Shown: positions 1-61,469 of the stretch, piece by piece
Position numbering within the stretch: position 1 is the stretch's first letter
Layout: each line of letters begins with the position of its first letter
Source: Mobula hypostoma
Taxonomy: Eukaryota
Assembly: GCF_963921235.1 (NCBI RefSeq)
Contig: NC_086117.1
Location: 15,562,001-15,626,000, forward strand
Direction: 5' to 3'
Length of the DNA stretch: 64,000 nt
The notes under the pieces: generated by a model
Databases searched by the model: none
What the model was told of the DNA's origin: nothing
What the model saw: the letters and a program-made list of their open reading frames with translations, nothing else
Made by a program: the position numbers and the translations under genes

Positions 1-626
1 TTAAAACTTCAGGGCAAAAAATAGAATGCGGATCAATGATGTAACAAGTCAATAGAATGCTGAGCAATGATGTAACAAGTCACTTTACTCTGTTGTCACT
101 GTATAATAAAATGCCATAATATGTTAACATAGAGCAAAAATAACCATTTCTACAAAAGAAGTGTTGAACCTGGTATAATAATACTGCGCGGCATGTTATA
201 TCACCAGCCGTTCGCACCCTCTAAACCATGCTTGTTGCAAATTCAGCCAATTCCACCCATCCAACTGGTATTTTGCAAACAAATGCAGCCACTAGTGTTT
301 TAGGCATTGGTACATCTAGACAATAGATGAAATTGGATTATGCAGCAAATTTTTGAAGAGTCCATTCTGCAGTTACTCGCCATAATAGTGGGTTTTAGTT
401 CAATCCCCCCCTCCCCGTACGGATTATGAGCAATGTTCACTGTGGGATACGGTACAGACGTGTCAACTTGTACAGTCTCATCATCACCACCAATAGAAAC
501 ATGGAGCTTTGAAAGTGGCCCGTTCTTTGGTGCGGCGCGGAGTCGTCGCAGGAGCCCTCCCGCTCTTGAAGCGCCTCAGCAGACTGGACACCCTGGGCCT
601 AAAGTTTACCCACAGACGCCCGTTGA
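1..626 (-). other. NTNG2: NTNG2 3' UTR (continues beyond window start)
   Basis: Directly downstream of the stop codon; no minus-strand AATAAA seen in 1-626. Confidence 0.7.
20..81. repeat. 31-bp tandem duplication (2 copies, 2 mismatches)
   Basis: aatagaatgcggatcaatgatgtaacaagtc / aatagaatgctgagcaatgatgtaacaagtc. Confidence 0.9.
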
Positions 627-847
627 CTAGGAGAATGCAGCCACCAGCAGCAGTGTGAGAGCGTAGAGCAGGGCAGTGCCCGGGCCGAGGGATGAGACGG
701 GCGCCGCGTTGCAATCCTCGTCCTGCAGGTCGCATTTGCGGCTTTCGCACAGGACGCCGGTGTAGCCCTTGGGGCAGAGGCAGCGCTGGTTCTGACGGCA
801 GGTCCCGCCGTTCTGGCACAGCAGGAGTTCATTGTCGCAGATATTTG
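627..847 (-). CDS. NTNG2: NTNG2 last coding exon: EGF-like domain plus hydrophobic GPI-anchor signal
   Basis: Acceptor ttttgtctccctcag|CA, phase 1. Encodes (P)[39 protein letters not shown]...[19 protein letters not shown] at 627-629. Confidence 0.95.
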
Positions 848-954
848 CTGAGGGAGACAAAAGGGCAGCTTTTAAGATCGGGAAGGGTTGAGGGGAAGTG
901 AGGTTGAAACTTTTAAAACTGTTATTTCAGGAAGCAGGAGCCGCACACAAAAGC

Positions 955-3520: not shown

Positions 3521-3655
3521 GGAAGCAGCCCTGTCTCCAGTGGAATCCTGGTTTACAATCATCACACTTCACGCCCGTTGCTCCTTCCCTACATTCACAG
3601 TGTCCAGTCTCATTGCAGCGATCGTGCCTCGATCCGTGTTGATTGCAGTTGCATA
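3521..3655 (-). CDS. NTNG2: NTNG2 laminin-EGF 3 exon (135 nt, phase 1-1)
   Basis: aaacag|TA...TTCC|gtgagt. Encodes (V)[44 protein letters not shown]. Confidence 0.95.
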
Positions 3656-6524: not shown

Positions 6525-7660
6525 TAGAAACATTGAAAACCTACAGCACAATACAGGCCCTTCGGCCCACAATGCTGTGCCGAACATGTACTTACTTTAG
6601 AAATTACCTCGGGTTACACATAGCTCTCTATTTTTCTAATCTCCATATATCTATCTAGGAGTCTCTTAAAAGACCCTATCATATCTGCCTCCACCACAGT
6701 CCCTGGCAGCCCATTCCACGCACTCACCACTCTCTGCACAAAAAAAACTTACCCCTGACATCTCCTCTGTACCTACTCCCCAGCACCTTAAACCTGTGCC
6801 GTCTGGTGTTAGCCATTTTAGCCCTGGGAAAAAAAGCCTCTGACTATCCACACGATCAATGCCTGAAATAATCTTATACACCTCTATCAGGTCACCTCTC
6901 ATCTTTCGTCGCTCCAAGGAGAAAAAGCCGAGTTCCCTCAACCTATTCTCATAGTGCATGCTCCCCAATCTAGGCAACATCCTTGTAAATCTCCTCTGCA
7001 CCCTTTCTATAGTTCCTACATCCTTCCTGCAGTGAGGTGATCAGAACTGAGCACAGTACTCCACGTGGGGTCCTATATAGCTGTAACATTACCTCTCGGC
7101 TCTTAAACGCAGTCCCACGGTTGAGGAAGGCCAATGCACTTGTATGCATTCTTAACCACAGAGTCAATGCGCAGCAGCTTTGAGTGTCCTTGAGTGCCCC
7201 AAGATCCCTCTATCCCTCCACACTGCCAAGAGTCTTACCATTAATTCTATATTCTGCCATCATATTTGACCTACCAAAATGAACCACCTCACACTTATCT
7301 GGGTTGAACTCCATCTGCCACTTCTCAGCCCAGTTTTGCATTTGATCAATGCCCCACTGTAACCTCTGACAGCCCTCCACACTATCCACAACACCCCAAT
7401 CTTTGGGTCATCAGCAAATTTACTAACCCATCCCTCCACTTCCTCATACAGGTAATTTATAAAAATCTCGGAGAGTAGGGATCCTAAAACAGATCCCTGA
7501 GGCACACCACTGGTCACCGACCTCCATGCAGAATATGACCCGTCTACAATCACTCTTTGTCTTCTGTGGGCAAGCCACAAAGCAAGGTCCCCTTGGATCC
7601 CATGCCTCCTTTCTTTCTGAATAAGCCTTGCACGGGGCACCTTATCAAATGCCTTGCTGG
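6525..7660 (-). mobile_element. CR1 LINE 3' fragment
   Basis: SGVPQGSVLG, SKFADD and QRRFTRMLP...RGDLIEVYKI fragments; ttctat-type tail at ~6525. Confidence 0.9.
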
Positions 7661-8684
7661 ATATCTAAAGGGCTGCCATCCATTTGTTTAAATAAATGGG
7701 TGCCAGAAGTCAGCGTCAATGTTTGCAAGGAAGATGCAAGGAAAAGACAGTATTCCTTGTGACCAGTAAAGCGTGAGAGTGATGAGCCTGGCTATTGTGC
7801 CAGAGTAGTGTGAGTAACCTTCTGCATGCCGAATGGCCTAATTCTGCTCCCATGTCATATGGACTTAGGTTAATTAAAACGGACTCCTCTGTCAGTGACC
7901 AGTCGGTGGTCGGTACCTAGTCCAACCTGGCTGAAAATCTCGCCAAGGACAAAGTTAAATGTTGAAAGGGAGATGGAGACTGGACCATGGAACATCCAAA
8001 CCCAGACACCAAAACGAGTACAGAATACCTACGCCGAAACATGCGTAAAATTGCTCTTTGCCGTATTAGCATAAACATTAACTTTACCACACTCTTATTT
8101 TTCAGCAGTTAAACAGAGGAATTTCTGAGCACTGATCAGCTTTTGGTCACAGCTGCCAAGATCGAATGTAACCGAGCAAGAGGAAACCCGGATGTCCCCA
8201 CTTTCTCTGTACCCTTGTCCGGGGAACGCCGCGGACGAGAAGTTTCTGGCGGGGACTGAGCCGCGCAGACTGACTGTGCCGGAGCGACTGGAGAGCAGGG
8301 CGCGGCCTCGACGCTAATTGTGGAATGCTTTACTGCGACTGGGGTATTTAAATTAATTTCTCTTCTCCTTCTCAATCACACTTGTCAACACAGCTTTGTC
8401 AACACGGGGGCGTAAGAAACAGCAGCAACTGTTCTACACACAAAAGAAAACAATGGCAGGGCCAGAGAACCTGCGGGAGATCTTAGCAAACGTTTCACCC
8501 GTTGAGTCCAGGACAGCCCTTCCTCCGCGCTCCTGTTGAGCCCTTGCTGAGAGAGCCTGTTCACAGTTCAACCCTCACATAGACTGACTGACTGGTCACT
8601 GCATAAAATGCTCTGTCAGACACAGGTGAAGGTATCAGAACTGCGGAGCTGTAACCGAATCCAATCAGGTGCAGACCTCTTGAC

Positions 8685-9441: not shown

Positions 9442-9609
9442 CAATACAAACATTCTCGTCGTCTAGTTCAGCAGAGGCGTTGCGATAGTAGCCCAGTCGG
9501 CAGTGCTGGCAGTGCTGCCCCCTGGTGTTGTGTTTGCAGCTAACGCAAGTCACGATCTTCAGATACTCTATGTAACTGCAGCGATTGGAGTGTCCGTAGC
9601 ATTCACAGT
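9442..9609 (-). CDS. NTNG2: NTNG2 laminin-EGF 2 exon (168 nt, phase 1-1)
   Basis: ctttccattttag|AC...ATTG|gtcagt. Encodes (D/N)[55 protein letters not shown]. Confidence 0.96.
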
Positions 9610-12010: not shown

Positions 12011-14717
12011 GTTGGAATGGAAATGAAGGTCTAAAATTTAGACCGCCCTAATATTCACTGGCTACCGATCATAGTTGCAAATAGAAGGGGGGAAGTGAAC
12101 AAAATCTAACACACAGAATAACTGTGAGACAATGTAAATGATGCAGTGTCAAACGCTGCTCCAGTATACGTGGACTACACAATATCGACTATTCTAATTA
12201 CTTTCCTACCTTTAACACTCCCCTGGGTTGCTTCTGGGTTTGACCTTGGTTGCGACTGAGGTAATTTTTTCACTTTTTCTGGTGCTTGAAAAGTCAAAAC
12301 AAAAAGTCCTTCCATTGTTATCACCGCATGTGATGCTTTAAGGCAAGGTGAGGTAAATAACCGGAAATAAAATCAACAGTCCACTGGCTATATATGGCAG
12401 CAGGAATAACAGACGTGAGAGCTATTAAGCGGTAGATAATTCGCGATTAAGAGAAAAGATATTAGAAAATAAGATTGTTGGGGTACTTTCCAGGGCAGAG
12501 ATCTGGCGAAGCGAACGTCTTGTAGGTGGGTTTGATTCAAATGAATGGGAGTACAAATGAGCGGGGATCTGGAAAGCGGAGTTGGCAAAAATAATCTTCA
12601 GTGATAACGTGAACACCGCGGCTTCAGTGGTCTCGTACCATCGCAAAACTGCACGATTAAGTCTTAGCAAACACACAATCGGCTGAATGGTCACGCCCTG
12701 TGTTGTAAACATGACGCACAAAATGCTAAGTCACATTCGAGTTTATCGTTATATGCATAAGTAAATGGGAAAAGCTCACTTGCATCAGCATCACATGGCA
12801 TCATTTAACGGGACAAAACTGAAATTTAAATACTGTGCTTAATTATTCCTCTTTTGCTGAATAAATTACCATGTTCCGTAAACTAGATTTTACAATGCGA
12901 TTTACCATTCTACACACAGGCTGGGCCACGTGTCTAGGGTGCCAAACCCTTGGCCCTTTGAACTTAATTGCCTTTCACAACAGGGTGGTGGGGGGGGGGC
13001 GTTGGGGTGTTAATACCGACGTGCATCACAAACTAAGTGAGGAACAAGTAACTTCTGAAACTTTGCTACATCTTCCGACCGGAATTGAGCTTCACTCGAG
13101 CGAACACTTTACGATAAAGATACACCATGTTTGGGCGTGAATCCAAACGTAATTACTGCATATGCCCAATCCTTCCGGACATTTATTTAAAATAAAACAG
13201 GCCATCGTTTCTAAAATACGCAGAGACGTTTATTTATCCCCGAACGGACTTTTCAGGGTTCAATTTATGAATTTGATAATCATTATCCCCAACAAATCCA
13301 GATTACAACAAAGTAGTCGTTATCAACGGACCACGGATGAAAAAATGCTACTTATCCCTACTTTCCCCGAGTATTTAGAAATATAAAAGGTTTCTTCATT
13401 TTGTCTTTGTAGCAGCATTATAACCCCGGTGTCAAATTCCCAAGCCTACTCAGCGCGTAATAAATAACTGGTGGCGGCTTCCAGGGTTCATTAAATTATA
13501 ACGTCACCTGTTCTACTAGAAGAAGCACGTTTTTAGACCATAGGAGCAGAATTCGGCCATTTGGCCCATTGAGTCTGCTTCGCCATTTCATCATGGCTAG
13601 TCCAATTCTCCTCTCAGACCCAATCTCCTGCTTTCGCCCTGCACCCCTTCACGCTCTGACCAAACAACATCTATCAACTCCTGCCTTAAATACACATAAA
13701 GACTTGGCCACCACAACTGCCCGTGGCAACGAATTCCACAGTTTTTTAAAGAAATACAATTAATGAAGTACATATAATTCGGTTAACGATGTGTAACTTG
13801 TTTGTACTTTTTAATTTGTATCATTACCCGTGCAATTCGCAGGGAAAATCACTTCTGCTACATTTAAAAGAGATTTAACTTTTTCTTTCAATAAGAAAAT
13901 CTAAAAAGCGGACAAGAGGCAGCCGGTGTTCTAAGCAACTCGCGTAGGGATTTTTCACTGGGGCTGAAAGGGGAGAGTTTAAACTAAATCCGGATGTACT
14001 CGTGCTTTCTGATTGGATTGAATCTGTTTCCAGCATTTTCGGTATTTGATTCGGATTCTGTATTTTTAAGAAACTGTGGCATCTACGTCGACACAAAAAA
14101 AAAATCGCTCAACACCACAGGTAGGAAATCGTAAGTCCTATGTTCACAATAGTTTGAGAGGGCTAACGTCTCCGTTTACCCTGTAGCCGAACCCATCTCA
14201 CGTTTAAGATGCAGCTTTTAACAAAAGACGGGAGCTTGCATTTAGTGCAATGAAGACTGGCTTTATTAAAATGTTAATAATTATAATTCTCCATTTAAAG
14301 GGGTAACTGAAAAGTCTAATTGTTTAAAATAACCCGAGGAGGCAGACTAAATATCCCCGCCTTCACCTTTCCAAGTGTTAATCTGTTGATAGTTTATCAA
14401 AACGTTTCGGTTTAATGCTTTGTTATTTATCATTTAGCAGATTGGATCTGCGGTAAATGTCAGGAGTGTTTTAAGCCTCCTGAATCCTCGCATTAATATA
14501 ACTATGTCCGACCTTTCCCTGTCTATTTTGCCATTTGATGTCCCCTACCGCCTGATTTCTGGCACCATGCCCGAGTTCGAAGATAATTTTGACTATGGGC
14601 GAAAGTACACGACGGGAGAGGTCGGTCGCACCGCCCATTATTTACCTCTCCGGACAGTCCTAAGTGTGATCGTGCGGAATGATTGGCAGTGATTGGCAAT
14701 GATTGAGAGAATTAACT

Positions 14718-15726: not shown

Positions 15727-16989
15727 CAAAAGAGAAACCGGTGACTCTGGGGAAGAGTCAGGTATTTGTGGGACATCTGGATGATTATTATTGAGAGCCT
15801 CTAGCCTGTCATCAGGGTCAAGGTTGCTGGTGACTACTAATTGATCCATTTGTCATTAAGGGTGACAGAACTGTGACCTCCCCTAAATCAGCCCGGGAGA
15901 TGCAAGGACAGTTTTATGAGATATGCCTGCTTTAATATGAAACCTAATAGCTGCTTGATTTCATATTGGACATCCTTCTAGACTAGGCTACTTCTATTCC
16001 TGTCTTATTAATCTTATCAATTTTATAAACAGTGCATCTTAAAACTGCACTAAATTGACACATTTACCTACTATCTCTCAGTTAAACATGCAATTTAACT
16101 TGTGTTACAGAGAGGCTCTGCATCTTCCACTCTGCTTTGCAATTCACTCTGACAGGTTGATAGAGCAGATTGGATTTAACTGACAGCATCTAAAATTTAT
16201 GTCAGTGATTCCCACCAGTACAAGAACTGTTTCAGCTTGGCATATTGTTGCTTCTTCCCTGTATCCAACGAGGCAACATGGCGTCACCAAGTATCTAACA
16301 TGAAAGGCAGCAGTCAATTAAAGTTCAATATAATAATTGGGGGAAATTACATGCACTGAGACTGTAAGGCATACAGTTGGAGCAGCATTAAGCTATTCAG
16401 ACCATTGAGTCCGCTGCACCATTACATCATGGCTGATTTATTAACCCTCTCAACACCATTCTCCTGCCTTCTCCCCATAACTTTGACACCTTGACAAATC
16501 AAGAGCCAATCAACCTCCACTTTAAATATACACAGTGACTTGGCCTCCACAGCTGTCTGTGTCAATGAATTCCACAGATTCCCCATCTTCCGGCTAAAGA
16601 AATTCCTCCTGATTTCTGTTCTAAAGCATGCTTGCACACTTTAGTTTGTGACAATAGTTGCCTATTGGAGTAGAAACGGAGAGATGATTGAAGCACAAAG
16701 TGGTGTAATGCAAGCACTTATCCCACAGATGACTCAGAACTAATCCTTATGTGTCTGATTGAGATTACAATGATATAGGGAATAAGTGAACTCGGAATGG
16801 TCTGATATTACCATGTTTAATATTGATCTACTATAAATCGGAAAATTCAGCTTTAATTGCTAAACTTTTCTTTCCCACTATTAAGCATACTTCATCAGAA
16901 GCTCTCATACCCCTGAGTCAACCAGCTTGTTACACTGATGGGTAACTTGTAACAGTATTGTTTACCATTACTTCCATCTCAGAATACTG

Positions 16990-17640
16990 CTTAGAACATA
17001 GAACAGTACAGCCCACAATGTTGTGCCAAACCAGCTAAAAAGCAAATCAAAAATACCTAAACACCAATCCCTTCTACTTAAACAACGTCCATATCCCTCC
17101 ATCTTCCTCACATCCATGTGCCTATCCAAACATCTCTTAAAAGCCTCTAATTTATTTGCCTCTACCACCATGCCAGGCAGTGCATTCCAGGCATCCACTA
17201 CTCTCTGAGCAAAAAACTTACCCCTCACATCCTCCTTGAACCTACCCCCTCTCACCTTCAATGCATGCCCTCTGGTATTAGACATTTCAACCCTGGGACA
17301 CAGATATTCCCTGTCTACTCTATTTATGCCTCTCATAATCTTATGCACCTCTATCAGATCTCCCCTCTTCCTCTGGCACTCCGGAAAAAAAACAACCCAA
17401 GTTTATTCATCCTCTCATGATAGCACCTGCCCTCTAAGCCAGGCAGCATTCTGGTAAACCTCTTCTGCACCATCTCCAAAGCCTCAACATCATATAGTGG
17501 GGTGAACAGAACTGTGTGCAATACTCCAGATGTGGCCCAACCGGAGTTTTATGAAGTTGCAACATAGCGCCATGACTTTTGAACTTAATGCCTCAACTAG
17601 TAAAAGCAAGCATTCAATAAGCTTTCTTAACCGCCTTATC
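16990..17640 (-). mobile_element. CR1 LINE 3' fragment
   Basis: KIMRGINRVDRE...TRGHALKVRGGRFKEDVRGKFFAQRVV; ttctatgttcta tail. Confidence 0.9.
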
Positions 17641-19845
17641 GAGCTGGAATCTTTAGGTGAACTAGGACCCAAGAGACTGCAGATGCCAAAATTTGGAGCA
17701 AAAAAGAAAGAACTACTAGGAGAACTTAGCAGATGAGATAGCATCTGTGATGGCAAAGGGATAGTTGGCATTTCAAGTCAAGACCCTGGATCAGGATTTA
17801 AGGCTTTGATCATCCTTTTGCCTCCACAGATGCTGCTTGATCTAATGAGATCTTCTGGCACTTTTGTTCTTGTCGCTCTGGATTTCTCGTGTGGCAAGAT
17901 GCTGACTACTGGCAATTATCCAGTTATCCTCTGGGGATTGGGTAATTGTGCCATCGTATCGGTTCTCTACAGGTATATCTATGGCATTCCCTTCCACTTA
18001 ATGGAATCTGTGTCACCCATGAAAAACAAACCAATTCCTCAGGGATTGCTCTAAATGATCTACAGCTAATTGCCATTGCTCCTGAAGGTCTCTAAATTGA
18101 AACAGAATAGATAAGCATTTATTATCAGGTAACTCAGTGAATGCAGGGCTTTCTGATTTGTAACCAATTCACATTTTATATATTCACAGAACCTCACCAA
18201 AAGAACATTGCACCACCCTCCTCCCTTCCTCGATGTGCCTATGAACTGGTGTTATACGGTAGCACAGTGGTTAGCAGAAAACAATTACAGCGCCAGTGAC
18301 CCCGGTTCAATTCCGCCGTTGTCTGTAAGGAGTTTGTACGTTCTCCTTGTGACCGCGTGGGCTTCCTCTGGGTTTTCTGCTGTCCTTCTGCATTCCAGAG
18401 ATGTACGGGTTAGTAGGTTAATTGGTCACGTGGGTGCTATTCGGCGGTGTGGGCTCATTGGGTCAATAGGGCCTGTTACTGCGCTGTAAATCTCAAAATC
18501 TAAAAATATACACATTATGCCAGTTTACACTTGCTTCAATTCTAGAAAATAGTTTTAATTTTACCAATCATAAGAAATGGAATCTTAGGTTTAATTTCAG
18601 TTGACAGAAATGTAGTAATAATTTAACTTGTTATTTTAGTCACAGGAACCAATCTATTTAATATTATGACTCCGTGTATATCAGAGCAGATTTTGCCTGT
18701 TAAAAATGTAGTAATTTCCATATTTAATTTAAGTGATTACAAATGTCTATTAGACCATTTAAGCCACTTTAGAAAATGGCAAAGTGAATCTGTGAATTAG
18801 GATTTTAAATGCGAGATTATGTCTGGTGCCCTTTTAAGAAAAACCATTGCTCATTATAAGATGCACCAGTGCTCATAGAAGGCATTCATATTATCAGCAG
18901 GAACTGGAGCTAGGAAAGAATCTGAGAGGCAGGGATTAATTTGTCAATGAACTTGTCTCCTGGGATAGTGCTCAGCCTGCCCTGCATCTACTCCCTTCAT
19001 TACTCATAGTGTAGGCCATGACCTTCTCATGTCGCATATCACTGTTGATCGTTCAACAAGCCTGAGCCTCTGTCTCCAGTGTGGAACCTCATACAGCACC
19101 AGCAACGCGGTAGACGAAGGAGTCAGTGAGGGATTTTCCTCCTAATGTACATGAACAAAATGATTGAATGTGGCAGAAAGGAGTAAGATCTGTTTATCTA
19201 CGGAGGGGTAATTGATTTATTTAGTGTAGAGGTGCAGGCAGAGAAAAGTATCTGTTGTACAATTGAGTATATCATTATTACAGATAGAGCACTGTTAAAA
19301 CTAACTATCCAGGGGCTTCATGTTTGTTACCGTGTAACTTTGATTTCTTCATGACCAGACAGTGGCAAATCGTCAAGGTATCCCCTAGCAGTGAACAGAG
19401 TCGTTTCAGAGTCAGATCATTAGGGTGAGATACTTTGTAGAAGAAAAATATTCCACTGGGGAGAACAAGACCCTCGGTGTGTTGAAAATGTGTATTCAGG
19501 TTTTACCCACTGAATATAAAGTGATCTGCAATAATAAGAAGCCATGAGATTCATACCCAGAGGAGAGAAAACCTGCTGAATACTGCGCTTTGTGGATAAA
19601 ACTGCTCACTTAAAGATATTTCAGAAGGAAACGAATCCATTAACTGTTATTACAAGTAAATCTTCCATTTTCATTCACTTAGCCGAAACATCTGTTATCA
19701 GATGTTCACTTGAGTGGCTACTCAGACACATCTCTGTTAATACTAAGTATCTAGGAGATCAATCTATGTTTAAAATTAAGATTTAGAACAAATAATTATT
19801 GTGCTTATGTCACTGGTCAGAATCAATAACTTAATATAATCTCAC

Positions 19846-19884
19846 CTTTCTTGATTCCTTGTCTGGAGACTGATCCCTGTCCTC
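19846..19884 (-). CDS. NTNG2: candidate alternative microexon C (39 nt): (G)GQGSVSRQGIKK
   Basis: ctgcttgtttacaag|GA...AAAG|gtgaga; phase 1-1, no stop; shares the GxKK end with two neighbours. Confidence 0.7.
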
Positions 19885-21515
19885 CTTGTAAACAAGCAGT
19901 GGACCGTCATATAGATACAGTGTGTCAGGTACGAGCATTGTAAATTGAAGACTCTATCAGTAAGATAATTTCATTCCACAAGAGAAGCAGCTATTGCTCT
20001 TTTTTTTTGCAAACTAGGCAATCCAATCTCATAATTCACATTAAAGGATTATGGTTTCTCTAAGTAATTACACTAAATTAAAATATATTCTACTTGAATT
20101 TCTGTCAGTATATTTAATTATTAACAAGAATCAGTTTCCATTTATATAGCACCACTGATATAGACCTCAGTAACCCAGAAAAGCATTATCAGCAAAGCAC
20201 AGAAAGGGATGACCAAAAGTTTGGTCAGAGATGTAGGCTTTAAGGACCACACTTAAGAGGGAAGGAGACTGGAAAGTTCTGGGAGGAATTGGTTGCCAAG
20301 GGTGCTGTAAGGACAGAAGGCCAAAAATGGAGGAGTACAGATCTCTGAAGTTGGAGGGAGGGGAGAGGCACTGAAACTGTTTGAAAGTGGTTGAACATTT
20401 TAACTGGAAGCTAGTATGGATAACACAGCTTGGGACGAGTGACAGAGGAACGTGATAGTACAATTTAGGACACACGCAGTCAGGTTTTAATCTGCCTATT
20501 CTAATCCAAAACAATTTCATTATGCCGTATTAGTACTTTGTAAAATGTAAGTATTGCAAAACACAGGTCTTGCCACAAACCAACTATCTTTTGATGACTT
20601 CAATTAACTAATACCATCTCTGCAACCAATTTAATTGCTAAAATTTATATTACACTTGATGACCGAATGATTGGTGATTTAGCCATGTAAAGGGATCAAA
20701 AGGCATTTAAAAGTTTTTATCATAAGGTACATGTAGCAAATTGTGTAGGACTTAGTCACAGAATAGCTAATGGTGTTGTACTTAGTGTATAAGTTAGATG
20801 ATTGTGTAGTAATGGAGAAGTGTATAAGATGTTAGTCAGACTTGCAGAGCAGTCCAGTAAGTTGACTTTGTATGGGAACATTTCCTTCAGAGAATTATTC
20901 TTGGCTGCATATCCACAGGGAACTCACCTAGCAACAGGGTCACTGTTGCGTATGGTTGATACATTCCAAGAATGCAGATAAATCACAGATAATTGATCAC
21001 TTGACAAAATATACATATAACCTTTAGAAGAGACCCAAATATAGTGCATTTTAACTCTTTGGCAGAATCTGGATTGGACCATTGAGAGAAATTGGAATTT
21101 GAAAAGTATAAAGGGAATGGAGATATGATTAAAAAGAAGAAAATTGGGGTTATAGGGTGTCAGCTGATCTCAGTGGGGCCACACAACACTGAAATGGTAT
21201 AATCGCATTCAACTGTAGTGGCTCTGGCTGGGGTTGTGTGGGTGCAGACTTTGAACAGGCACGGAGCTCTGCATGGCTGTGATGATGTCCTTGGTGGAAT
21301 TGCCTGATGATGTTCCATTTCTGACCTGGCTTTCAAGGGACAATGTAAAATTAATGAAGGTAATATAAAGCAGAAGAAATTATCTGCACCTTGAATAAGC
21401 TACACGTAACGGGTTTTAAATTCTGTCAAAGAGCATGGAAACTAGCAGGCTTTCACTTATAACTGGTAGATACCACTATGGGTCTCAGTTATTCTAACCA
21501 GAATGATAAACTCAC

Positions 21516-21551
21516 CCTTTTTAACTCCTTGCTCAGCAATCGGTACAAGTC
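21516..21551 (-). CDS. NTNG2: candidate alternative microexon B (36 nt): (R/G)LVPIAEQGVKK
   Basis: gtgcttctatttcttgttaaag|GA...AAGG|gtgagt; phase 1-1, no stop. Confidence 0.72.
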
Positions 21552-21875
21552 CTTTAACAAGAAATAGAAGCACAATTTCTAAGGTGGGTTAGAATCCACT
21601 AATAACGTTGCAAATGTAGTTGTCTCAGTTACTAGAGCTAAAGGCTACGTTCACTAAAGATAACTAATACTAAAAAAAGGTGGAATCACTAGTAACTATG
21701 CAGAGGAAACTTTGATTCCAAAATAACTAGTGATAACAAATAGTTAGTTTTAAAATCAGAGTTGCTTAAGATTATAATAACTGTTAACTGTTGTTCTATG
21801 CTAACTATTACTAGTTAGTAATTTTGGTCCATGCTAACTAATACTAATTATTAATGACCCATGTGGAAGACTTAC

Positions 21876-21914
21876 TCTTCTTGGCCCCTGTATCGAGACG
21901 AGGAATGATTTCTC
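21876..21914 (-). CDS. NTNG2: candidate alternative microexon A (39 nt): (G)EIIPRLDTGAKK
   Basis: ctctgttctgcttcattgaaag|GA...AAGA|gtaagt; phase 1-1, no stop. Confidence 0.7.
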
Positions 21915-22744
21915 CTTTCAATGAAGCAGAACAGAGGCAGATTGATGAACAATTTTGAGGAAAATTCAGCTCTCGAGTCTTCTGATAACTGCTATTTACA
22001 CACTTAATTGTGGAGAATTCTCGAAGTTAGGTTGTGCTATTGACGAGAAATGAAGGAATATGGTTCAGCACAGGGAATACACTAAGCATCATGGACAGGG
22101 AATGGACAGCAAGAAGTTGAGTTCCTTGATGAATACTGTTCCAAGAAAATTGATGGTTTTAGTGGCCAATTTGACTAGTGAATTGATCAGTGTTCCTTCT
22201 GGTGAATCTACTGGTGGACTAATACAAGTGAGAGTATCCATAGGCTTAGTTACTATTTCTGTTTTGACATTGCCATTAATTCTTTCCTTTCTGCAGGAAT
22301 CTGGGAATGAAATCCAACTGATTTCTTTAAAAAATAGCCTTATTGACAGGCTCTTTCTCAACTGTACCAGTATCATGAGAATATAAGGAAAAGGAGCAGG
22401 AATGGGCTAATTAGCCCTTCAACTCTATTTTGCTTTTGAATAAGATTATGAATGATTCAATCTTGACCTCAGGATTACATACGCCCCATTACCCACAAAT
22501 CAAGCCATTTCACTGGTACCCAGAGCTTTCACTATCTTATCTGTCCAGACACCAACTATTGAATTACCTTTATTTTTTTTATTTTTCAATTCTTTAACAC
22601 CTTTCCTTACTTCCAAAAAAAATGTCAAGGTTTGTGCCTGTCCTTCTAAAGTTTTGCTCTTTATTCTTCCTTTGATCTTAAATTTATGTTCCTTTTTCTT
22701 ACTTGCTCTATTGAAAATTTACTTATCAAACAAACTCTCCCTTC

Positions 22745-28635: not shown

Positions 28636-28704
28636 CTGGCCCCTTCTGTGGCTTCTGTGAGGCGGCAGCTACGGGTGGGATCACCGCTTGTGATTTTTTG
28701 ATTA
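28636..28704 (-). CDS. NTNG2: candidate alternative exon (69 nt): (I)IKKSQAVIPPVAAASQKPQKGP
   Basis: tttcctttttgttttacacgtatacag|TA...CCAG|gtacaa; phase 1-1; Pro/Ala/Lys linker at the position where mammalian Ntng2 has alternative stalk exons. Confidence 0.65.
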
Positions 28705-31069: not shown

Positions 31070-31096
31070 TGCCGTAAGCAGAACTGGCAGCTACAC
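31070..31096 (-). CDS. NTNG2: NTNG2 27-nt linker microexon: (C)VAASSAYG
   Basis: cttcttctgatttcttttcag|GT...GGCA|gtaagt; phase 1-1; resembles mouse Ntng2 CAAAGSAFG (recalled). Confidence 0.92.
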
Positions 31097-33890: not shown

Positions 33891-34478
33891 AGAGGGAAAG
33901 TGCTTGAGTTTCATGCATGTTTTGGCCAGATTCAGCAGAGTTAAAAAATCTCTGTCAGTGAACTCCACTGTGCCTGGATTTGACTAAAAACAATTGTCCA
34001 GAGCTACAGTCTATACCACGGGACTGGGAGTTGTTCTTCCGTGTTCACTTGTTTCTGGAACACGCCATTATAGCTAAGGCATTGGAGTTGTCAAGACTAT
34101 TCTGGATTTGAACATGTCTTCCCCCAAACCTTGCACTTTGCATTAGTAATCCTGAAGGAGGTGGTAGTGCCCACTTCAAGGTACAAGTGAACTCCTTGCC
34201 AACTGCTGTCACTCTGCCATTCAGTCTCCTTCCAAAAACCTGGGCTTCTGGTGGGTACATTTGACCAGGGCTGTGTTGCTGGGTGCTGCCCACTGAAGTG
34301 GAATGAGGAACCTGTAGAGATTTCGAAAGTTCAGTGAAAATAGTGCATTCAGAAGAGATGGATTGTTACCTAATCGTAGCTCATAGTAGCAGCAAACCCC
34401 AAGGGTTACTTCCTTTCCAATGAAACATGGTCAACAAACAGAGGGCATGACACTATAAGAAAGCAATGGTATACATAC

Positions 34479-34651
34479 AGCTGTTGGCTGTTCCCATTGG
34501 GTATGGGCTGTAGCTGCCCGGTCGCCATGACTTGGCTTTATAGCTCTTCCTGCACTTTCCACAATCTTGGCCTGTTGTGTTGTGATCACATTCGCACATC
34601 AAACTCCCCTCCTTGAAGTGGCAGCTATTTGCATGCATGTTGCATTTACAC
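34479..34651 (-). CDS. NTNG2: NTNG2 laminin-EGF 1 exon (173 nt, phase 2-1)
   Basis: ccttcttgttccag|G...AGCT|gtatgt. Encodes (R)[57 protein letters not shown]. Confidence 0.96.
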
Positions 34652-41304: not shown

Positions 41305-44300
41305 TTCGGTGTCTCATATGGGAAATTGAGGAGGTGATAGATAGGAGCTACAGGGAGGTAGTCAACAGGAAATTGTAAGAGGCAGAAAAATAGGTGACTG
41401 CCAGGAGTGGGAAGGGAAATGAGCCGTTCCTGTGGCCATTCCCCTCAATGAGATGGGGAGCCATACCAACCAGGTCTCTGGCATTGAGTCTAGCACTGTG
41501 GCTCAGAAGGGAAGAAGACTGTAGCAGTGATAGGAGATTCCACAGTTAGAGGAGTAGACACAAGACTCTGTGGACACAATAGAGACATCCAGATGGTCTG
41601 TTACCTCCCAGGTGCTAGGTTCAGGGCCCAGGGTGTCTTGGCTCGGGTCCAAGGGGGACATTCTAAAGGGGGACAGTAGGCAGCCAGAGGTTTTGGTACA
41701 TATTGGCACCAATGACCTTGGTAGGAGAAGCGAGGAGGTTCCTGAAGAGAGAATTTGGGGAGCTAGGTAGAAGGCCGAAAAGCAGGACCTCCAGGGTAGC
41801 AATCTCAGGATCGCCGCCTGTGCCACTCACCAGCGAGGGCAGATGAATGCATGGCTGAGAAACCAGTGTAGGGGCACAGTTTCAGGTTACTGGATCATTG
41901 GGATCTCTTCTGGGGAAGATATCACCTGTACAAAAGGCACGATCACACCTGAACCCAAGGGCGACCAATACCCTTGCAGGCAGGTTTGCTAGACTTGTTG
42001 GAGAGGGTTTAAACTAATTTGACGGGGGGATGGGAACTGGAGTGATTGGGCTGAGGATAAGGCTGTTGGTTGACAAGCAGAGGCAGTGTGTAGTGAGACT
42101 CTCAGGAAGGACAGGCAAATGATCGGGCAAAATTGCCATTAGTGGGATGAGTTGCAGTGTAAAATAGGGACAAAGAGATAGAATTTGTAGAATGCCTATG
42201 AGATCACTTTTTAAGGGGCTTGTAGTTAAGCCCACTAGTCAGATGTATCAGTATTACAGTGGAAAAAAGGGAATTATAGAGCCAAAAGAGAGGAGCTGGT
42301 CAAAGTTGATTGGAAGGGAATACTAGCAGGGATGACGGCAGAATGTCATCTGGGAGAAATTTGGAAGGCGCAAAATAGCAGATCCCAAAAATGAAGTAAT
42401 ATTAATATTCTAAAGACAGGATGATACAACTGTATCTGACAAAGGAAGTCAAACTACATAAACGCAAAAGAGAGGGCATATAACAGAGCAAAAATCAGTG
42501 GCAAGTTAGAGGATTGGGAAGCTTTTAAAAACCAACAGAAAGAAACTAAAAAAGCCATAAGGAGGAAGGAGATGAAACAGAAAGGTAAGCTAACCAACAA
42601 TTCCATAAGTGTTTCAGATACATAATGAGTAAAAGGGAGGCAAAAGTAGATATTGGACAGCTGGAAAATGATGATGTAGAAATAGTAATGGGGGGCAAGG
42701 AAATGGTGAACAAATTGAATGAGTGTTTTACACCAGTCATCACTGTGGAAGACTCTAGCTGTACACCGGAAGTTCGAGAGTGTCAGGGGGCAGAAGTGAG
42801 TGCAGTTGCTATCACTGGGGAGCAGGTGCTTGGAAAAATGGAAGTCTGAAGGTAGCTAAGTCACCTAGACCAGATGGACTACACTCCAGGGTTTTGAAAG
42901 AGGTAGCTGACGAGATTGTGGAGGCATCAGTAATCATCTTTCACGAATCACTACGTTCTGAAATGGTTCTGGAGAACTGCAAAATTGCAAAAGTTACTCC
43001 AAGCTTCAAGAAGGGAGAGAGGCAGAAGAAAGGAAATAACAGGCCATTCAGCCTGACCTTAGTGGTTGGGAAGATGTTGGAGTTGATTGTTAAGGATGAG
43101 GTCTCAGAGTACTTAGAGGCGCATGATAAAATAGGCCAACGTCAGGATGGTTTCCTTAAGGGGAAATTTTGCCTGACAAACCTGTTGGAATTCTTCGAGG
43201 AAATAACAAGCAAGATAGACAAAGGTCAATCAGTGAACGTTGAGTACTTGGATTTTCAGAAGGCCTTTGACAAGGTGTTGCACATGAAGCTGCTTAACAG
43301 GATAAGAGTCCATGGTTTTACAGGAAAGATACTAGCATGGATAGAGGATTAGTTGATTGGCAGGAGGCAAAGAGTGGGAATAAAGGGAGCCTTTTCTGGT
43401 TGGCTGTCGGTGACTAGTGATATTCTGCAAGGGTCAGTGGTGGGACTGCTTCTTTTTACGTTGTATGACAATGATTTGGATGATGAAATTGATGACTTTG
43501 TGGCCAAGTTTTCAGACAACACAAAGATAGTTGGAGATGCAGGTAGTGTTGAGGAAGCAGAGAGGCTGCAGAAGGACTTAGACAGATTAGGAAAATGGGC
43601 AAAGAAGTGACAAATAGAATAAAGTATACAGAAGTGTATGGTCATGCACTTTGGTAGAAAGAATAAAAGTATGGATTATTTTCTAAACAGGGAGAAAATT
43701 CAAAATTCCAAGGACCAAGGGGACTCAGGAGTCCTTGTGCAAGATTCCCTAAAGGTTAATTTGCAGGTTGAGTTGGTGGTGAAAAAGGCACATTCAATGT
43801 TAGCTTTCATTTTGAGAGGACTAGAATATAGAAGCAAGATGCATTGCTGAAACTGTATAAGGCACTGGTGAGGCCTCACTTGGAATATTGTAAGCTGTTT
43901 TGGACCCCTTATTTAAGAAAGGATGTGCTCATGTTGGAGAGGGTTCAGAGGAGGTACACGAGGATCATTCCAGGAATGAAAGAAGTATTGTACGAGGAGT
44001 ATTTGATGGCACTGGGCCTTTACTCGCTGGAATTTAGAAGAATGAGGGGGAATCTCATTGAAACTTATCGAATATTGAAAGGCCTATATAGAGTGGATGT
44101 GGAGAGGATGTTTCCTATGGTGGGTAAGTCTAGGACCAGAGGGCACAGACTAAGAAGAGAGGGACGTCCATTTAGAATGGAGATGAAGATGAAATTCTTT
44201 AGCCAGGAAGTGGTGAATCTGTGGAATTCATTGCCACAGGCGGCTGTGGAGGCCAGGTCACATTTAAAGCGGAGGTCGATAGGTTCTTGATTAGGCAGTG

Positions 44301-57342: not shown

Positions 57343-60300
57343 TCAGAACCCTGCCCCAGCCTTCCCTCCATACCCCCTGCTCCCCGTAGCCACAAGGGCC
57401 ATATCTAACTCGCTCTTAAATATAGCCAATGAACTGGCCTCAACTGTTTCCTGTGGCAGAGAATTCCACAGATTCACCACTCTCTGTGTGAAGAAGTTTT
57501 TCCTAATCTCAGTCCTAAAAGGCTTCCCCTTTATCCTCAAACTGTGACCCCTTGTTCTGGACTTCCCCAACATCGGGAACAATCTTCCTGCATCTAGCCT
57601 GTCCAATCCCTTTAGGATTTTATACGTTTCAATCAGATCCCCCCTCAATCTTCTAAATTCCAATGAGTACAAACCCAGTTCATCCAGTCTTTCTTCATAT
57701 GAAAGTCCTGCCATCCCAGGAATCAATCTGGTGAACCTTCTTTGTACTCCCTCTATGGCAAGGATGTCTTTCCTCAGATTAGGGGACCAAAACTGCACAC
57801 AATACTCCAGGTGTGGTCTCACCAAGGCCTTGTACAACTGCAGTAGTACCTCCCTGCTCCTGTACTCGAATCTTCTCGCTATAAATGCCAGCATACCATT
57901 CGCCTTTTTCACCGCCTGCTGTACCTGCATACCCACTTTCAATGACTGGTGTATAATGACACCCAGGTCTCGTTGCACCTCCCCTTTTCCTAATCGGCCA
58001 CCATTCAGATAATAATCTGTTTTCCTACTTTTGCCACCAAAGTGGATAACTTCACATTTATCCACATTAAATTGCATCTGCCATGAATTTGCCCACTCAC
58101 CTAACCTATCCAAGTCACTCTGCATCCTCTTCGCATCCTCCTCACAGCTAACACTGCCACCCAGCTTCGTGTCATCTGCAAACTTGGAGATGCTGCATTT
58201 AATTCCCTCATCCAAGTCATTAATATATATTGTAAACAACTGGGGTCCCAGCACTGAGCCTTGCGGTACCCCACTAGTCACCGCCTGCCATTCTGAAAAG
58301 GTCCCGTTTATTCCCACTCTTTGCTTCCTGTCTGCTAACCAATTCTCCATCCACACCAATACCTTACCCCCAATACCGTGTGCTTTAAGTTTGCACACTA
58401 ATCTCCTGTGTGGAACCTTGTCAAAAGCCTTTTGAAAATCCAGATATACCACATCCACTGGTTCTCCCCTATCCACTCTACTGGTTACATCCTTAAAAAA
58501 TTCTATGAGATTCGTCAGACATGATTTTCCTTTCACAAATCCATGCTGACTTTGTCCGATGATTTCACCGCTTTCCAAATGTGCTGTTATCACATCTTTG
58601 ATAACTGACTCCAGCAGTTTCCCCACCACCGACATTAGGCTAACCGGTCTATAATTCCCCGGTTTCTCTCTCCCTCCTTTTTTAAAAAGTGGGGTTACAT
58701 TAGCCACCCTCCAATCCTCAGGAACTAGTCCAGAATCTAACGAGTTTTGAAAAATTATCACTAATGCATCCACTATTTCTTGGGCTACTTCCTTAAGCAC
58801 TCGAGGATGCAGACCATCTGGCCCTGGGGATTTATCTGCCTTCAATCCCTTCAATTTACCTAACACCACTTCCCTACTAACATGTATTTCGCTCAGTTCC
58901 TCCATCTCACTGGACCCTCTGTCCCCTACTATTTCTGGAAGATTATTTATGTCCTCCTTAGTGAAGACAGAAACAAAGTAATTATTCAATTGGTCTGCCA
59001 TGTCCTTGCTCCCCATAATCAATTCACCTGTTTCTGTCTGTTGGGGACCTACATTTGTCTTTATCAGTCTTTTCCTTTTTACATATCTATAAAAGCTTTT
59101 ACAGTCAGTTTTTATGTTCCCTGCCAGTTTTCTCTCATAATCTTTTTTCCCCTTCCTAATTAAGCCCTTTGTCCTCCTCTGCTGAACTCTGAATTTCTCC
59201 CAGTCCTCAGGTGAGCCACTTTCTCTGGCTAATTTGTATGCTTCTTCTTTGGAATTGATACTATCCCTAATTTCTCTTGTCAGCCACGGGTGCACTACCT
59301 TCCTTGATTTATTCTTTTGCCAAACTGGGATGAACAATTGTAGTTCATCCATGCAACCTTTAAATGCTTGCCATTGCATATCCATCGTCAATCCTTTAAG
59401 TGTCATTTGCCAGTCTATCTTAGCTAATTCACGTCTCATTCCTTCAAAGTTACCCCTCTTTAAGTTCAGAACCTTTGTTTCTGAATTAACTATGTCACTC
59501 TCCATCTTAATGAAGAATTCCACCAAATTATGGTCACTCTTACCCAAGGGGCCTCTCATGACAAGATTGCTAATTAACCCTTCCTCATTGCTCAAAACCC
59601 AGTCCAGAATAGCCTGCTCTCTAGTTGGTTCCTCGACATGTTGGTTCAAAAAACCATCCCACATACATTCCAAGAAATCCTCTTCCTCAGCACCTTTACC
59701 AATTTGGTTCACCCAATCTACATGTAGATTGAAGTCACCCATTATAACTGCTGTTCCTTTATTGCACACATTTCTAATTTCCTGTTTAATACCATCTCCG
59801 ACCTCACTACTACTGTTAGGTGGCCTGTACACAACTCCCACCAGTGTCTCTGCCCCTTAGTGTTACGCAGCTCTACCCATATCGATTCCACATCTTCCCG
59901 GCTTATGTCCTTCCTTTCTATTGCGTTAATCTCTTCTTTAACCAGCAACGCCACCCCACCTTCCCTTCCTTCATGTCTATCCCTCCTGAATATTGAATAT
60001 CCCTGAACGTTGAGCTCCCATCCTTGGTCACCCTGGAGCCATGTCTCTGTGATCCCAACTATATCATAATCATTAATAACAATCTGCACTTTCAATTCAT
60101 CCACCTTATTACGAATGCTCCTTGCATTGACACACAAAGCCTTCAGGTGCTCTTTTACAACTCTCTTAGCCCTTATACAATTATGTTGAAAAGTGGCCCT
60201 TTTTAATGCTTGCCCTGGATTTGTCGGCCTGCCACTTTTACTCTTCTCCTTAGTACTTTTTGCTTCTACCCTCACTTTACACCCCTCTGTCTCTCTGCAC

Positions 60301-60392
60301 TGGTTCCCATCCCCCTGTTGTGAACTAACCTCCTCACGCCTAGCCTCTTTAATCTGATTCCCACCCCCCAACCATTCTAGTTTAAAGTCACC
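57343..60392 (-). pseudogene. CR1 ORF2: APE endonuclease plus reverse transcriptase, one frameshift near 59850
   Basis: NARSI, ITETW, GDFN, SDH (endonuclease); KSPGPDG, DFQKAFD, GVPQGSVLGP, FADD (RT); 832 uninterrupted codons. Confidence 0.95.
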
Positions 60393-61311: not shown

Positions 61312-61469
61312 ACTGCCCCTCTCCTCAAATAGCAACAGAAAATGAATGCCAAACCTTCCTCGCCTCGCCCGTTTCCACCTAAGCCCGTTGAGCCAAAGCC
61401 CTTAAGCCCTCACTCTGCTCCCGGCTCACTCCGCCGCCCGCAAACTACGCTGCCCGCTCTATGAGGCTC

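What the first reader, a model, noticed from the sequence alone, without database searches (positions are those of the whole stretch)
19846..21914. Array of three frame-preserving GxKK microexons in the netrin-G2 stalk
Seen: 21876-21914 (39 nt, GEIIPRLDTGAKK), 21516-21551 (36 nt, xLVPIAEQGVKK) and 19846-19884 (39 nt, GGQGSVSRQGIKK). All start aag|GA, are phase 1-1, lack stops, end G-x-K-K and have strong donors (gtaagt, gtgagt, gtgaga). Each has a TGC about 12-21 nt upstream of the AG. Three independent chance matches sharing all of this are unlikely. Established: netrin-G genes vary this LE1-LE2 linker by alternative splicing, and upstream UGC marks SRRM3/4-dependent neural microexons. Inference: duplicated exons form a combinatorial stalk cassette (16 combinations with the 69-nt exon) that tunes length and charge of a synaptic adhesion protein. 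The peptides do not resemble the mammalian Ntng2 alternative exons as I recall them.
Basis: partly seen in the sequence, partly recalled or inferred. Interest (0 to 1): 0.85.

Follow-up and report, generated by a model that had tools for sequence, protein, structure and literature searches.

The report
Shark netrin-G2 linker mini-exon array
Three tiny optional exons in the flexible stalk of the synaptic adhesion gene netrin-G2 are almost certainly real, but the same exons are already annotated as alternatively spliced in three other sharks, so this is a correct but ordinary finding.

Summary
On the minus strand lie three stop-free, phase 1-1 segments with AG/GT boundaries: 21914-21876 (39 nt), 21551-21516 (36 nt) and 19884-19846 (39 nt). 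They sit in the 21.5-kb intron between a 27-nt exon (31096-31070) and the LE2 exon (9609-9442) of netrin-G2.

Splice sites plus an open frame are not beyond chance on their own. The shared 3' motif AARAARR|GTRAG is: 3 hits in 64 kb, all here, against 0.23 expected.

The decisive evidence is comparative. RefSeq isoforms of netrin-G2 from Scyliorhinus torazame, S. canicula and Stegostoma tigrinum contain cassettes of the same size, phase and order:
- A: ETISRPDKEVKN-type
- B: PAPTAEQEVKK-type
- C: PTSMQGQGIKK-type

These cassettes are included or skipped in different combinations.

It also has a 69-nt cassette (28704-28636), a 75-nt pre-LE2 cassette (12284-12210) and one decayed cassette (~18.9 kb).

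"GxKK" is specific to this species, not a family motif. SRRM3/4 control is untested. No RNA evidence was obtained for this species itself: four RNA runs showed no contig on the exons.

Novelty is low, because these are orthologues of annotated exons in the known alternatively spliced "Ukd" region.

The parts
34475..34651 (-). LE1 (laminin EGF-like 1) exon of netrin-G2; donor gtatgt
   Evidence: Pfam EGF_laminin E=3e-7. 54/58 identical to S. torazame NTNG2 LE1. Sequence read.
31070..31096 (-). 27-nt constitutive exon, (C)VAASSAYG, phase 1-1. It is the end of LE1 and the counterpart of mammalian exon 5.
   Evidence: Sequence. Identical or near-identical VAASSAYG / VAASSTYG begins the linker in all 13 shark isoforms.
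28636..28704 (-). 69-nt alternative cassette, (I)IKKSQAVIPPVAAASQKPQKGP, phase 1-1
   Evidence: tblastn with shark cassettes gives E=6e-8. 15-16/23 identical to Scyliorhinus and Stegostoma. Skipped in S. torazame X3 and X5. Boundaries tatacag| and |gtacaa.
21876..21914 (-). Microexon A, 39 nt, EIIPRLDTGAKK, phase 1-1, aag|GA ... |gtaagt
   Evidence: Sequence. Same position, length and phase as the annotated cassettes ETVSSLDKEVEI, ETISRPDKEVKN and ETNLRLEKEVKN. Ranks 3, 46 and 46 of 11,297 intron peptides. It is the best tblastn hit of the Stegostoma cassette. TGC at -14 and -25.
21516..21551 (-). Microexon B, 36 nt, LVPIAEQGVKK, phase 1-1, aag|GA ... |gtgagt
   Evidence: Sequence. Orthologous to PAPAAEREVKK, PAPTAEQEVKK and PIPTAERKVKK (6-7/11 identical). 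Ranks 2, 1 and 1 of 11,885. Best splice scores in the intron. TGC at -21.
19846..19884 (-). Microexon C, 39 nt, GQGSVSRQGIKK, phase 1-1, aag|GA ... |gtgaga
   Evidence: Sequence. Orthologous to GRISTSGQAIKT, EPTSTSGQAIKT and PTSMQGQGIKK (5-6/12 identical). Ranks 1, 12 and 1. TGC at -14.
18840..18925 (-). Probably decayed cassette: counterpart of the Stegostoma exon DSALPQAVADNMNALYELWFSHNEQRFTS, here with a frame shift, an in-frame stop and no frame-preserving donor. The 3' limit is approximate.
   Evidence: tblastn 63% over 19 aa, E=2e-4. Sequence read.
12210..12284 (-). 75-nt pre-LE2 cassette, (A)PEKVKKLPQSQPRSNPEATQGSVK, phase 1-1. A second AG 6 nt downstream (12278) would give a 69-nt form.
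   Evidence: Sequence. Orthologues begin APEK... (APEKILKPRQTEPRPRPEEQGNFQ, APEKRPKPPQTQPRFKPREQGNIE), tblastn E=3e-4. Skipped in S. canicula X3 and X5.
9442..9609 (-). LE2 exon, (D)[10 protein letters not shown]...DENVCI
   Evidence: Pfam EGF_LMN_ATRN E=3e-10. 54/55 identical to shark NTNG2.
3522..3653 (-). LE3 exon (core)
   Evidence: Pfam EGF_laminin E=8e-11. 35/44 identical to shark NTNG2.
630..845 (-). Last coding exon: EGF-like domain plus hydrophobic GPI-signal tail
   Evidence: Pfam EGF E=4e-6. 48/67 identical to Scyliorhinus NTNG2. RNA runs hold up to 76% of the sampled words of window 1-926.

Best explanation
The three segments are genuine, alternatively spliced cassette exons of netrin-G2. 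They belong to an array of at least five intact symmetric (phase 1-1) cassettes of 69, 39, 36, 39 and 75 nt, plus one decayed cassette. The array encodes the unstructured 'Ukd' stalk between the LE1 and LE2 domains of this GPI-anchored presynaptic adhesion protein.

Every cassette begins and ends after the first base of a codon, so any subset can be included without changing the frame. Each of A, B and C adds 12-13 residues ending in Lys-Lys. Splicing therefore sets the length and positive charge of the stalk.

The three share a TGCTT...AAG|GA acceptor region and a Q/T-G-x-K-K|GTRAG end. The 75-nt cassette ends similarly (QGSVK). They most likely arose by tandem duplication of a linker exon before the sharks compared here diverged.

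Shown: the sequence features, the orthology to annotated cassettes, and combinatorial use of those cassettes in the annotated isoforms of related sharks.

Inferred: inclusion in this species, neural regulation through the upstream UGC (SRRM3/4) or Nova, and any effect on binding in cis or on cleft spacing.
For: - Gene identity and exon map.
- Intact AG/GT, phase and open frame.
- Motif clustering: 3 hits against 0.23 expected and 3 against 0.00.
- Similarity is confined to the exon and splice sites, not the flanks. No dispersed copies in the window.
- The profile search found shark NTNG2, and cluster members gave 13 isoforms from 3 species.
- Their linkers show cassettes of the same order, size and phase as A, B and C, skipped singly and jointly. 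Examples: S. torazame X2 lacks A, X4 lacks A and B, S. canicula X4 lacks A, B and C, Stegostoma X13 lacks A and C.
- S. torazame X3 reads ...YG-R-ETVSS when the A-type cassette follows the 27-nt exon directly. This is the Arg junction codon that the window sequence predicts.
- Empirical ranks of the predicted exons among ~11,500 intron peptides: B 2/1/1, C 1/12/1, A 46/3/46. tblastn hits are collinear.
- The neighbouring decayed cassette (~18.9 kb) shows what loss of constraint looks like in the same intron, whereas A, B and C keep their frame and sites.
- Gly and Lys codons of the shared ending differ among A, B and C only at synonymous positions.
- TGC lies within -25..-10 for 3 of 3, against 20% of intronic AGs.
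- Mammalian NTNG exons 6 and 7 (Ukd) are alternative and Nova-regulated (bioRxiv 10.1101/034645).
Against: - There is no direct transcript evidence in this species. In four RNA runs that hold the gene's 3' exon, no contig lay on A, B or C, although a 35-nt piece was placed elsewhere in the same stretch. A word search on exon C listed no holder, but only 2 words were sampled.
- The shark isoforms are automatic RefSeq models whose RNA support I could not inspect.
- Exon A is only 3-5/12 identical to its counterparts, and its acceptor (AAG) and donor (A|GTAAGT) are weak.
- All three acceptors have A at -3, the rarest choice.
- Splice sites plus an open frame alone are within chance.
Confidence: 0.85

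Rival explanations
1. The exons were functional in an ancestor and remain so in other sharks, but in this species some of them, most plausibly A, are no longer spliced in. They would be recently silenced pseudo-exons that have not yet accumulated disabling mutations.
For: No contig over A, B or C in four RNA runs. Weak AAG acceptors, and a weak donor for A. A neighbouring cassette in the same intron has clearly decayed, so cassettes do turn over in this array. Scyliorhinus and Stegostoma also differ in which cassette follows C.
Against: All three keep AG, GT, exact length, phase and an open frame at a divergence where the A-type cassette is only 6/12 identical even between Scyliorhinus and Stegostoma. 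Synonymous-only differences in the shared Gly and Lys codons point to continued protein-level constraint. Ukd-containing NTNG2 isoforms are at trace level in mammals too, so absence from contigs is expected.
Confidence: 0.1
2. Chance look-alikes: three AG...GT open segments that resemble exons and each other by coincidence.
For: Segments with comparable splice scores and an open frame occur 2-3 times per 21 kb per phase. The shared motif was defined after the fact.
Against: The 12-nt motif occurs only at these three places in 128 kb of searched strand, against 0.23 expected. Independent cassette peptides from other sharks pick out exactly these sites as top or near-top hits, in the right order. 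Length and phase match the annotated cassettes.
Confidence: 0.03
3. Copies of a repeat or mobile element that happens to carry AAGAAAGGTGAG-like sequence, not exons.
For: Three similar short sequences lie within 2.1 kb, and the surrounding intron contains low-complexity TAG-rich sequence.
Against: The flanks do not align. Self-BLAST of 19.6-22.2 kb finds no other copy in the window. Similarity is limited to the acceptor region, the coding 3' end and the donor. Orthologous coding cassettes exist in other sharks.
Confidence: 0.02

Closest known systems
RefSeq netrin-G2 isoforms of Scyliorhinus torazame (XP_072344699-706), S. canicula (XP_038637491-495) and Stegostoma tigrinum (XP_048414983, XP_048414991)
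   Same: Same gene, same linker position, same cassette order (27 nt, 69 nt-type, A, B, C..., APEK exon, LE2). Same cassette lengths (12, 11 and 11-12 internal codons) and phase. Recognisable sequence identity: B 6-7/11, C 5-6/12, A 3-5/12. Combinatorial skipping among the annotated isoforms.
   Different: The endings differ. The orthologues end EVEI/EVKN, EVKK/KVKK and AIKT/GIKK, against G-x-K-K in all three exons here. The cassette after C differs between lineages: DVPKRK... in Scyliorhinus, DSALPQ... in Stegostoma, and decayed here. S. canicula has an extra QQMQLILNMK exon. The window's species is a further lineage, 82-85% identical in the folded domains.
Mammalian NTNG1/NTNG2 'Ukd' region, alternative exons 6 and 7 (bioRxiv 10.1101/034645; isoforms G2a/b/c)
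   Same: Alternatively spliced short exons between the small exon that finishes LE1 and the LE2 exon. It is the least conserved part of the protein. Inclusion is regulated in brain (Nova reported). The 75-nt shark cassette resembles the mammalian pre-LE2 exon (…SKLFQLKPKSPQV…).
   Different: Mammals have two exons, while sharks have five or more. A, B and C show no significant similarity to mammalian or bony-fish linker peptides beyond shuffled controls.
Tandem lysine-rich linker cassettes in annotated Xenopus laevis and sauropsid NTNG2 isoforms
   Same: Repeated paralogous cassettes with a G/S-K-K motif near the 3' end (…SGKKQTMT, …LSKKQTKT, …SGKKHSKT; birds and turtles …SAGKKHAKKP), present or absent between isoforms.
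   Different: The cassettes are longer (about 21 aa). Orthology to the shark trio is not demonstrated, and they may be independent duplications.
SRRM3/4 (nSR100)-dependent neural microexons
   Same: Short symmetric exons in a synaptic adhesion gene, with weak acceptors and UGC 12-21 nt upstream of the AG.
   Different: At 36-39 nt they exceed the strict 3-27 nt definition. Neural specificity and SRRM dependence were not tested. The UGC is part of a TGCTT block shared by descent among the three, so it may reflect ancestry rather than regulation.

Membership tests
Netrin-G2 (NTNG2) gene | Three laminin-type EGF (LE) domains followed by a C-terminal EGF-like domain | tested here: met
   Pfam EGF_laminin / EGF_LMN_ATRN on three exons and EGF on the last exon.
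Netrin-G2 (NTNG2) gene | N-terminal laminin N-terminal (LN, domain VI) module | not testable with these tools
   No LN exon lies in the window. tblastn with full-length NTNG2 gives no hit for residues before LE1, so the exons must lie beyond position 64000.
Netrin-G2 (NTNG2) gene | C-terminal hydrophobic GPI-attachment signal | tested here: inconclusive
   The last exon ends ...[19 protein letters not shown], hydrophobic and aligned with the tails of annotated NTNG2. No GPI predictor was run.
Netrin-G2 (NTNG2) gene | Closest to annotated NTNG2 rather than NTNG1 | tested here: met
   LE2 begins CECYGH as in NTNG2, whereas NTNG1 has CECFGH. 82-85% identical to shark NTNG2 over the folded parts. 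All top hits are named netrin-G2.
Alternative Ukd/linker cassette exons of netrin-G | Located between the small exon that ends LE1 and the LE2 exon | tested here: met
   A, B and C lie between 31070 and 9609 on the coding strand.
Alternative Ukd/linker cassette exons of netrin-G | Frame-preserving (symmetric phase 1-1) with intact AG/GT | tested here: met
   Lengths of 39, 36 and 39 nt, stop-free in phase 1, with AG and GT present.
Alternative Ukd/linker cassette exons of netrin-G | Orthologous cassettes in related species | tested here: met
   Isoform alignment, tblastn and rank test.
Alternative Ukd/linker cassette exons of netrin-G | Observed inclusion and skipping in transcripts of this species | tested here: inconclusive
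   No contig on the exons in 4 RNA runs. The word search had too few words. Alternative use is seen only in annotated isoforms of other sharks.
SRRM3/4-dependent neural microexons | Length 3-27 nt (strict) or up to 51 nt (broad) | tested here: inconclusive
   36-39 nt meets only the broad definition.
SRRM3/4-dependent neural microexons | UGC-containing enhancer close upstream of the 3' splice site | tested here: met
   TGC at -14, -21 and -14, against 20% of intronic AGs having one in -25..-10. It is absent upstream of the 69-nt, 75-nt and LE2 exons.
SRRM3/4-dependent neural microexons | Neural-specific inclusion that depends on SRRM3/4 | not testable with these tools
   Needs tissue-resolved RNA-seq or a perturbation experiment.

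The most novel reading that the evidence does not exclude
The netrin-G2 stalk may be an 'exon accordion': a site where short lysine-rich cassettes are repeatedly duplicated, lost and re-shaped in every vertebrate lineage. Sharks have a trio plus a decayed member, Xenopus has three GKK cassettes, and teleosts have very long K/E- or His-rich linkers. In this shark lineage A and B have changed in parallel (E/K to G, N to K) to match C's G-x-K-K ending. This hints at selection or gene conversion for a repeated dibasic motif whose copy number is set by splicing, with the UGC-bearing trio co-regulated as one module.
Probability: 0.2. Interest if true: 0.45.

Novelty: already known. Interest (0 to 1): 0.25.

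Why it matters
Netrin-G2 and its ligand NGL-2 specify particular synapse classes, and alternative splicing of the stalk is one of the few ways the protein is diversified. Sharks carry a conserved array of five or more symmetric cassettes, against two in mammals, so combinatorial stalk splicing is old and was more elaborate early in jawed-vertebrate history. However, the exons are already present in automatic annotations of related sharks, and the principle is established in mammals. The practical value is therefore limited to two things: checking that this genome's annotation includes them, and providing a comparative data set for how linker microexons are born and die.

Tried and rejected
1. 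Splice-site PWM plus open-frame enumeration as a significance test. Rejected as evidence because chance gives 2-3 such segments per 21 kb.
2. Direct RNA evidence. Read laying on 19600-22200 gave no contig on the exons. A 60-nt word search on exon C had only 2 sampled words and listed no holder.
3. tblastn of bony-fish and mammalian pre-LE2 peptides against the intron. Only a weak hit to the 75-nt exon.
4. Local alignment of the A, B and C peptides against about 200 bony-vertebrate linkers. Not above shuffled controls.
5. Homology search with the eel NTNG2. No cartilaginous fish in the top 120.
6. Search with the shark LE1 exon alone. One genomic read-through fragment only.
7. First profile alignment (A2). 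It stacked the LE domains on each other and was discarded. The scaffolded alignment A3 worked.
8. Fetching orthologous genomic DNA. The genes span 117-126 kb, so no DNA was returned. DNA-level conservation of splice sites in other sharks was therefore not checked.
9. Repeat or mobile-element origin. Rejected.
Full report
**Observation.** Reading the minus strand confirms the three segments exactly as described.

| Exon | Coordinates | Length | Acceptor | Donor | Peptide (phase 1) |
|---|---|---|---|---|---|
| A | 21914-21876 | 39 nt | ttgaaag\|GA | \|gtaagt | EIIPRLDTGAKK |
| B | 21551-21516 | 36 nt | gttaaag\|GA | \|gtgagt | LVPIAEQGVKK |
| C | 19884-19846 | 39 nt | tacaag\|GA | \|gtgaga | GQGSVSRQGIKK |

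All three are stop-free in phase 1. TGC lies at -14 (and -25), -21 and -14 from the exon starts.

**Gene context.** The minus strand carries the 3' half of a netrin-G2 gene. The parts that flank the linker are:

| Part | Coordinates | Note |
|---|---|---|
| LE1 | 34651-34475 | laminin EGF-like 1 |
| 27-nt exon | 31096-31070 | (C)VAASSAYG; finishes LE1 |
| LE2 | 9609-9442 | laminin EGF-like 2 |
| LE3 | ~3653-3522 | laminin EGF-like 3 |
| Last exon | 845-630 | EGF-like domain plus hydrophobic tail |

LE2 begins CECYGH, as in NTNG2 and unlike NTNG1. The LN-domain exons are outside the window. The candidates lie in the 21.5-kb interval between the 27-nt exon and LE2.

**Is it more than chance?**
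- With rough splice-site matrices the three candidates are among the very few well-scoring phase-1-1 open segments in the intron.
- A proper null shows that segments as good as the weakest candidate arise about 2-3 times per 21 kb per phase. That criterion alone proves nothing.
- The shared ending is what stands out. AARAARR|GTRAG occurs three times in the window on both strands, all three at the candidates, against 0.23 expected. With GGNNNN in front it is 3 against 0.00. The patterns are post hoc, so these numbers flatter the case.
- The flanks do not align and there is no other copy of the region in the window. A repeat or mobile element is excluded.
- Similarity is confined to a TGCTT...AAG|GA acceptor block, the coding 3' end and the donor.
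- Among A, B and C the Gly and Lys codons of the shared ending differ only at synonymous positions.
- The 75-nt pre-LE2 exon ends similarly (CAG GGG AGT GTT AAA G|gt, QGSVK).

**RNA.**
- RNA runs of at least two organisms hold most of the gene's 3' exon.
- Laying four of them on 19600-22200 gave no contig on A, B or C, although a 35-nt piece was placed elsewhere in the stretch.
- A 60-nt word search on exon C had only two sampled words and listed no holder.
- There is thus no direct transcript evidence for or against inclusion in this species. Contigs drop rare isoforms, and in mammals the corresponding NTNG2 isoforms are present only at trace level (bioRxiv 10.1101/034645).

**Comparative evidence, which decides the case.**

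A representative search with LE2 and a homology search with an eel NTNG2 showed that NTNG2 has many annotated isoforms in bony fish and birds, and that these differ between LE1 and LE2. Neither search returned a cartilaginous fish. A profile built from eel, sturgeon and gar scaffolds plus the shark exon translations (A3) brought up netrin-G2 of Scyliorhinus torazame and Stegostoma tigrinum. Their clusters supplied 13 RefSeq isoforms from three sharks.

Aligning the linkers resolves these cassettes, in order:

| Position | Annotated shark cassettes | Exon in this window |
|---|---|---|
| 1 | VAASS[TA]YG | 27-nt exon |
| 2 | IIQETQAVIPPLAAASPEPQKVS type | 69-nt cassette |
| 3 | ETVSSLDKEVEI / ETISRPDKEVKN / ETNLRLEKEVKN | A |
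| 4 | PAPAAEREVKK / PAPTAEQEVKK / PIPTAERKVKK | B |
| 5 | GRISTSGQAIKT / EPTSTSGQAIKT / PTSMQGQGIKK | C |
| 6 | lineage-specific cassette | decayed copy at ~18.9 kb |
| 7 | APEK... cassette | 75-nt cassette |

- The third, fourth and fifth match A, B and C in position, order, length and phase.
- Different isoforms skip them singly or together: S. torazame X2 lacks A, X4 lacks A and B, S. canicula X4 lacks A, B and C, and Stegostoma X13 lacks A and C.
- S. torazame X3 reads YG-R-ETVSS where the A-type cassette follows the 27-nt exon directly. The window sequence predicts the same Arg junction codon.
- tblastn of each cassette against the window gives collinear best hits on the predicted exons.
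- In an ungapped scan of all ~11,500 stop-free peptides of the intron, the predicted site ranks 2/1/1 for B, 1/12/1 for C and 46/3/46 for A.
- The window's species is 82-85% identical to these sharks in the folded domains, while they are 89% identical to each other. The A-type cassette is only 6/12 identical even between them. The weak identity of A is therefore what orthology predicts.

**The array is larger than reported.**
- The window also holds a 69-nt cassette at 28704-28636 (IIKKSQAVIPPVAAASQKPQKGP; 15-16/23 identical to the other sharks).
- The pre-LE2 cassette is 75 nt (12284-12210, APEKVKK...), with a second AG 6 nt downstream.
- At ~18925-18840 there is a counterpart of the Stegostoma cassette DSALPQAVADNMNALYELWFSHNEQRFTS. 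Here it carries a frame shift, an in-frame stop and no frame-preserving donor. It looks like a decayed cassette and serves as an internal contrast to the intact A, B and C.

**Mechanism.** All cassettes are symmetric in phase 1, so any subset can be spliced in without changing the frame. Each of A, B and C adds 12-13 residues with a Lys-Lys end to the unstructured stalk between LE1 and LE2 of a GPI-anchored presynaptic protein. This changes the stalk's length and charge.
- Shown: structure, orthology, and combinatorial use in annotated isoforms of relatives.
- Inferred: use in this species, and regulation.
- The upstream UGC is present at 3 of 3 against a 20% background, and it is absent at the 69-nt, 75-nt and LE2 acceptors. 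This fits SRRM3/4-type microexons. It is also part of the block shared by descent, and in mouse the corresponding exons are reported as Nova targets.
- In netrin-G1 the Ukd region is reported to mediate a lateral interaction with LAR (cited in 10.1101/034645). A comparable role here is speculation.

**Comparison with what is known.**
- This is the shark version of the alternatively spliced Ukd region, which in mammals consists of exons 6 and 7.
- GxKK is not a family motif. In the other sharks the endings are EVEI/EVKN, EVKK/KVKK and AIKT/GIKK, so the Gly in A and B is derived in this lineage.
- Tandem lysine-rich cassettes also occur in annotated Xenopus and sauropsid NTNG2.
- The A, B and C peptides show no significant similarity to bony-vertebrate linkers.
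- No paper in the library describes the shark array, but it is present in public RefSeq annotations.

**Verdict.** Novelty is low, because orthologous exons are already annotated in related sharks and the principle is established. Interest 0.25.

Noticed in passing
window 18840-18925 (-): Counterpart of the Stegostoma NTNG2 cassette DSALPQAVADNMNALYELWFSHNEQRFTS (63% over 19 aa). In this window it has a 1-nt frame shift after ...EHW, an in-frame TAA and no frame-preserving donor. It is apparently a decayed linker cassette, or an assembly error.
   Followed up: partly
window 28636-28704 (-): Intact 69-nt phase 1-1 cassette IIKKSQAVIPPVAAASQKPQKGP with a strong acceptor.
   Followed up: yes
window 12210-12284 (-): The pre-LE2 cassette is 75 nt (orthologues start APEK), not 69 nt. 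A second AG 6 nt downstream (12278) could act as a tandem alternative acceptor that removes two residues.
   Followed up: partly
window 21915-21929 (-): The 15 nt just upstream of exon A translate in frame to (A)SLKG, which resembles the ALVKG extension present in Stegostoma isoform X3. Stegostoma seems to use an upstream acceptor that is TG, not AG, in this window.
   Followed up: partly
window 20212-20526: RNA contigs of runs X2 and X3 match 20212-20246 (35 nt, embedded in unrelated sequence), and X2 matches 20259-20526 (268 nt, 3 differences). This is probably a transcribed repeat or intronic fragment, not an NTNG2 exon.
   Followed up: no
window 57346-61401 (-): CR1-like LINE with an uninterrupted 837-aa ORF2 (endonuclease and reverse transcriptase) and a 319-aa ORF1 upstream. 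Several degraded copies lie elsewhere in the window (e.g. 6669-7664, 16971-17402, 43353-44287).
   Followed up: no
proteins P0352, P0339, P0315 (Xenopus laevis NTNG2 isoforms): The Xenopus linker contains three tandem paralogous cassettes ending ...SGKKQTMT, ...LSKKQTKT and ...SGKKHSKT, which differ between isoforms. This may be an independent expansion of lysine-rich linker exons.
   Followed up: no
proteins P0020, P0038, P0022, P0034 (teleost ntng2b): Teleost NTNG2 paralogues have LE1-LE2 linkers of several hundred residues that are His-rich or Glu/Lys/Thr-rich. Some are named 'histidine-rich calcium-binding protein-like' by automatic annotation.
   Followed up: no
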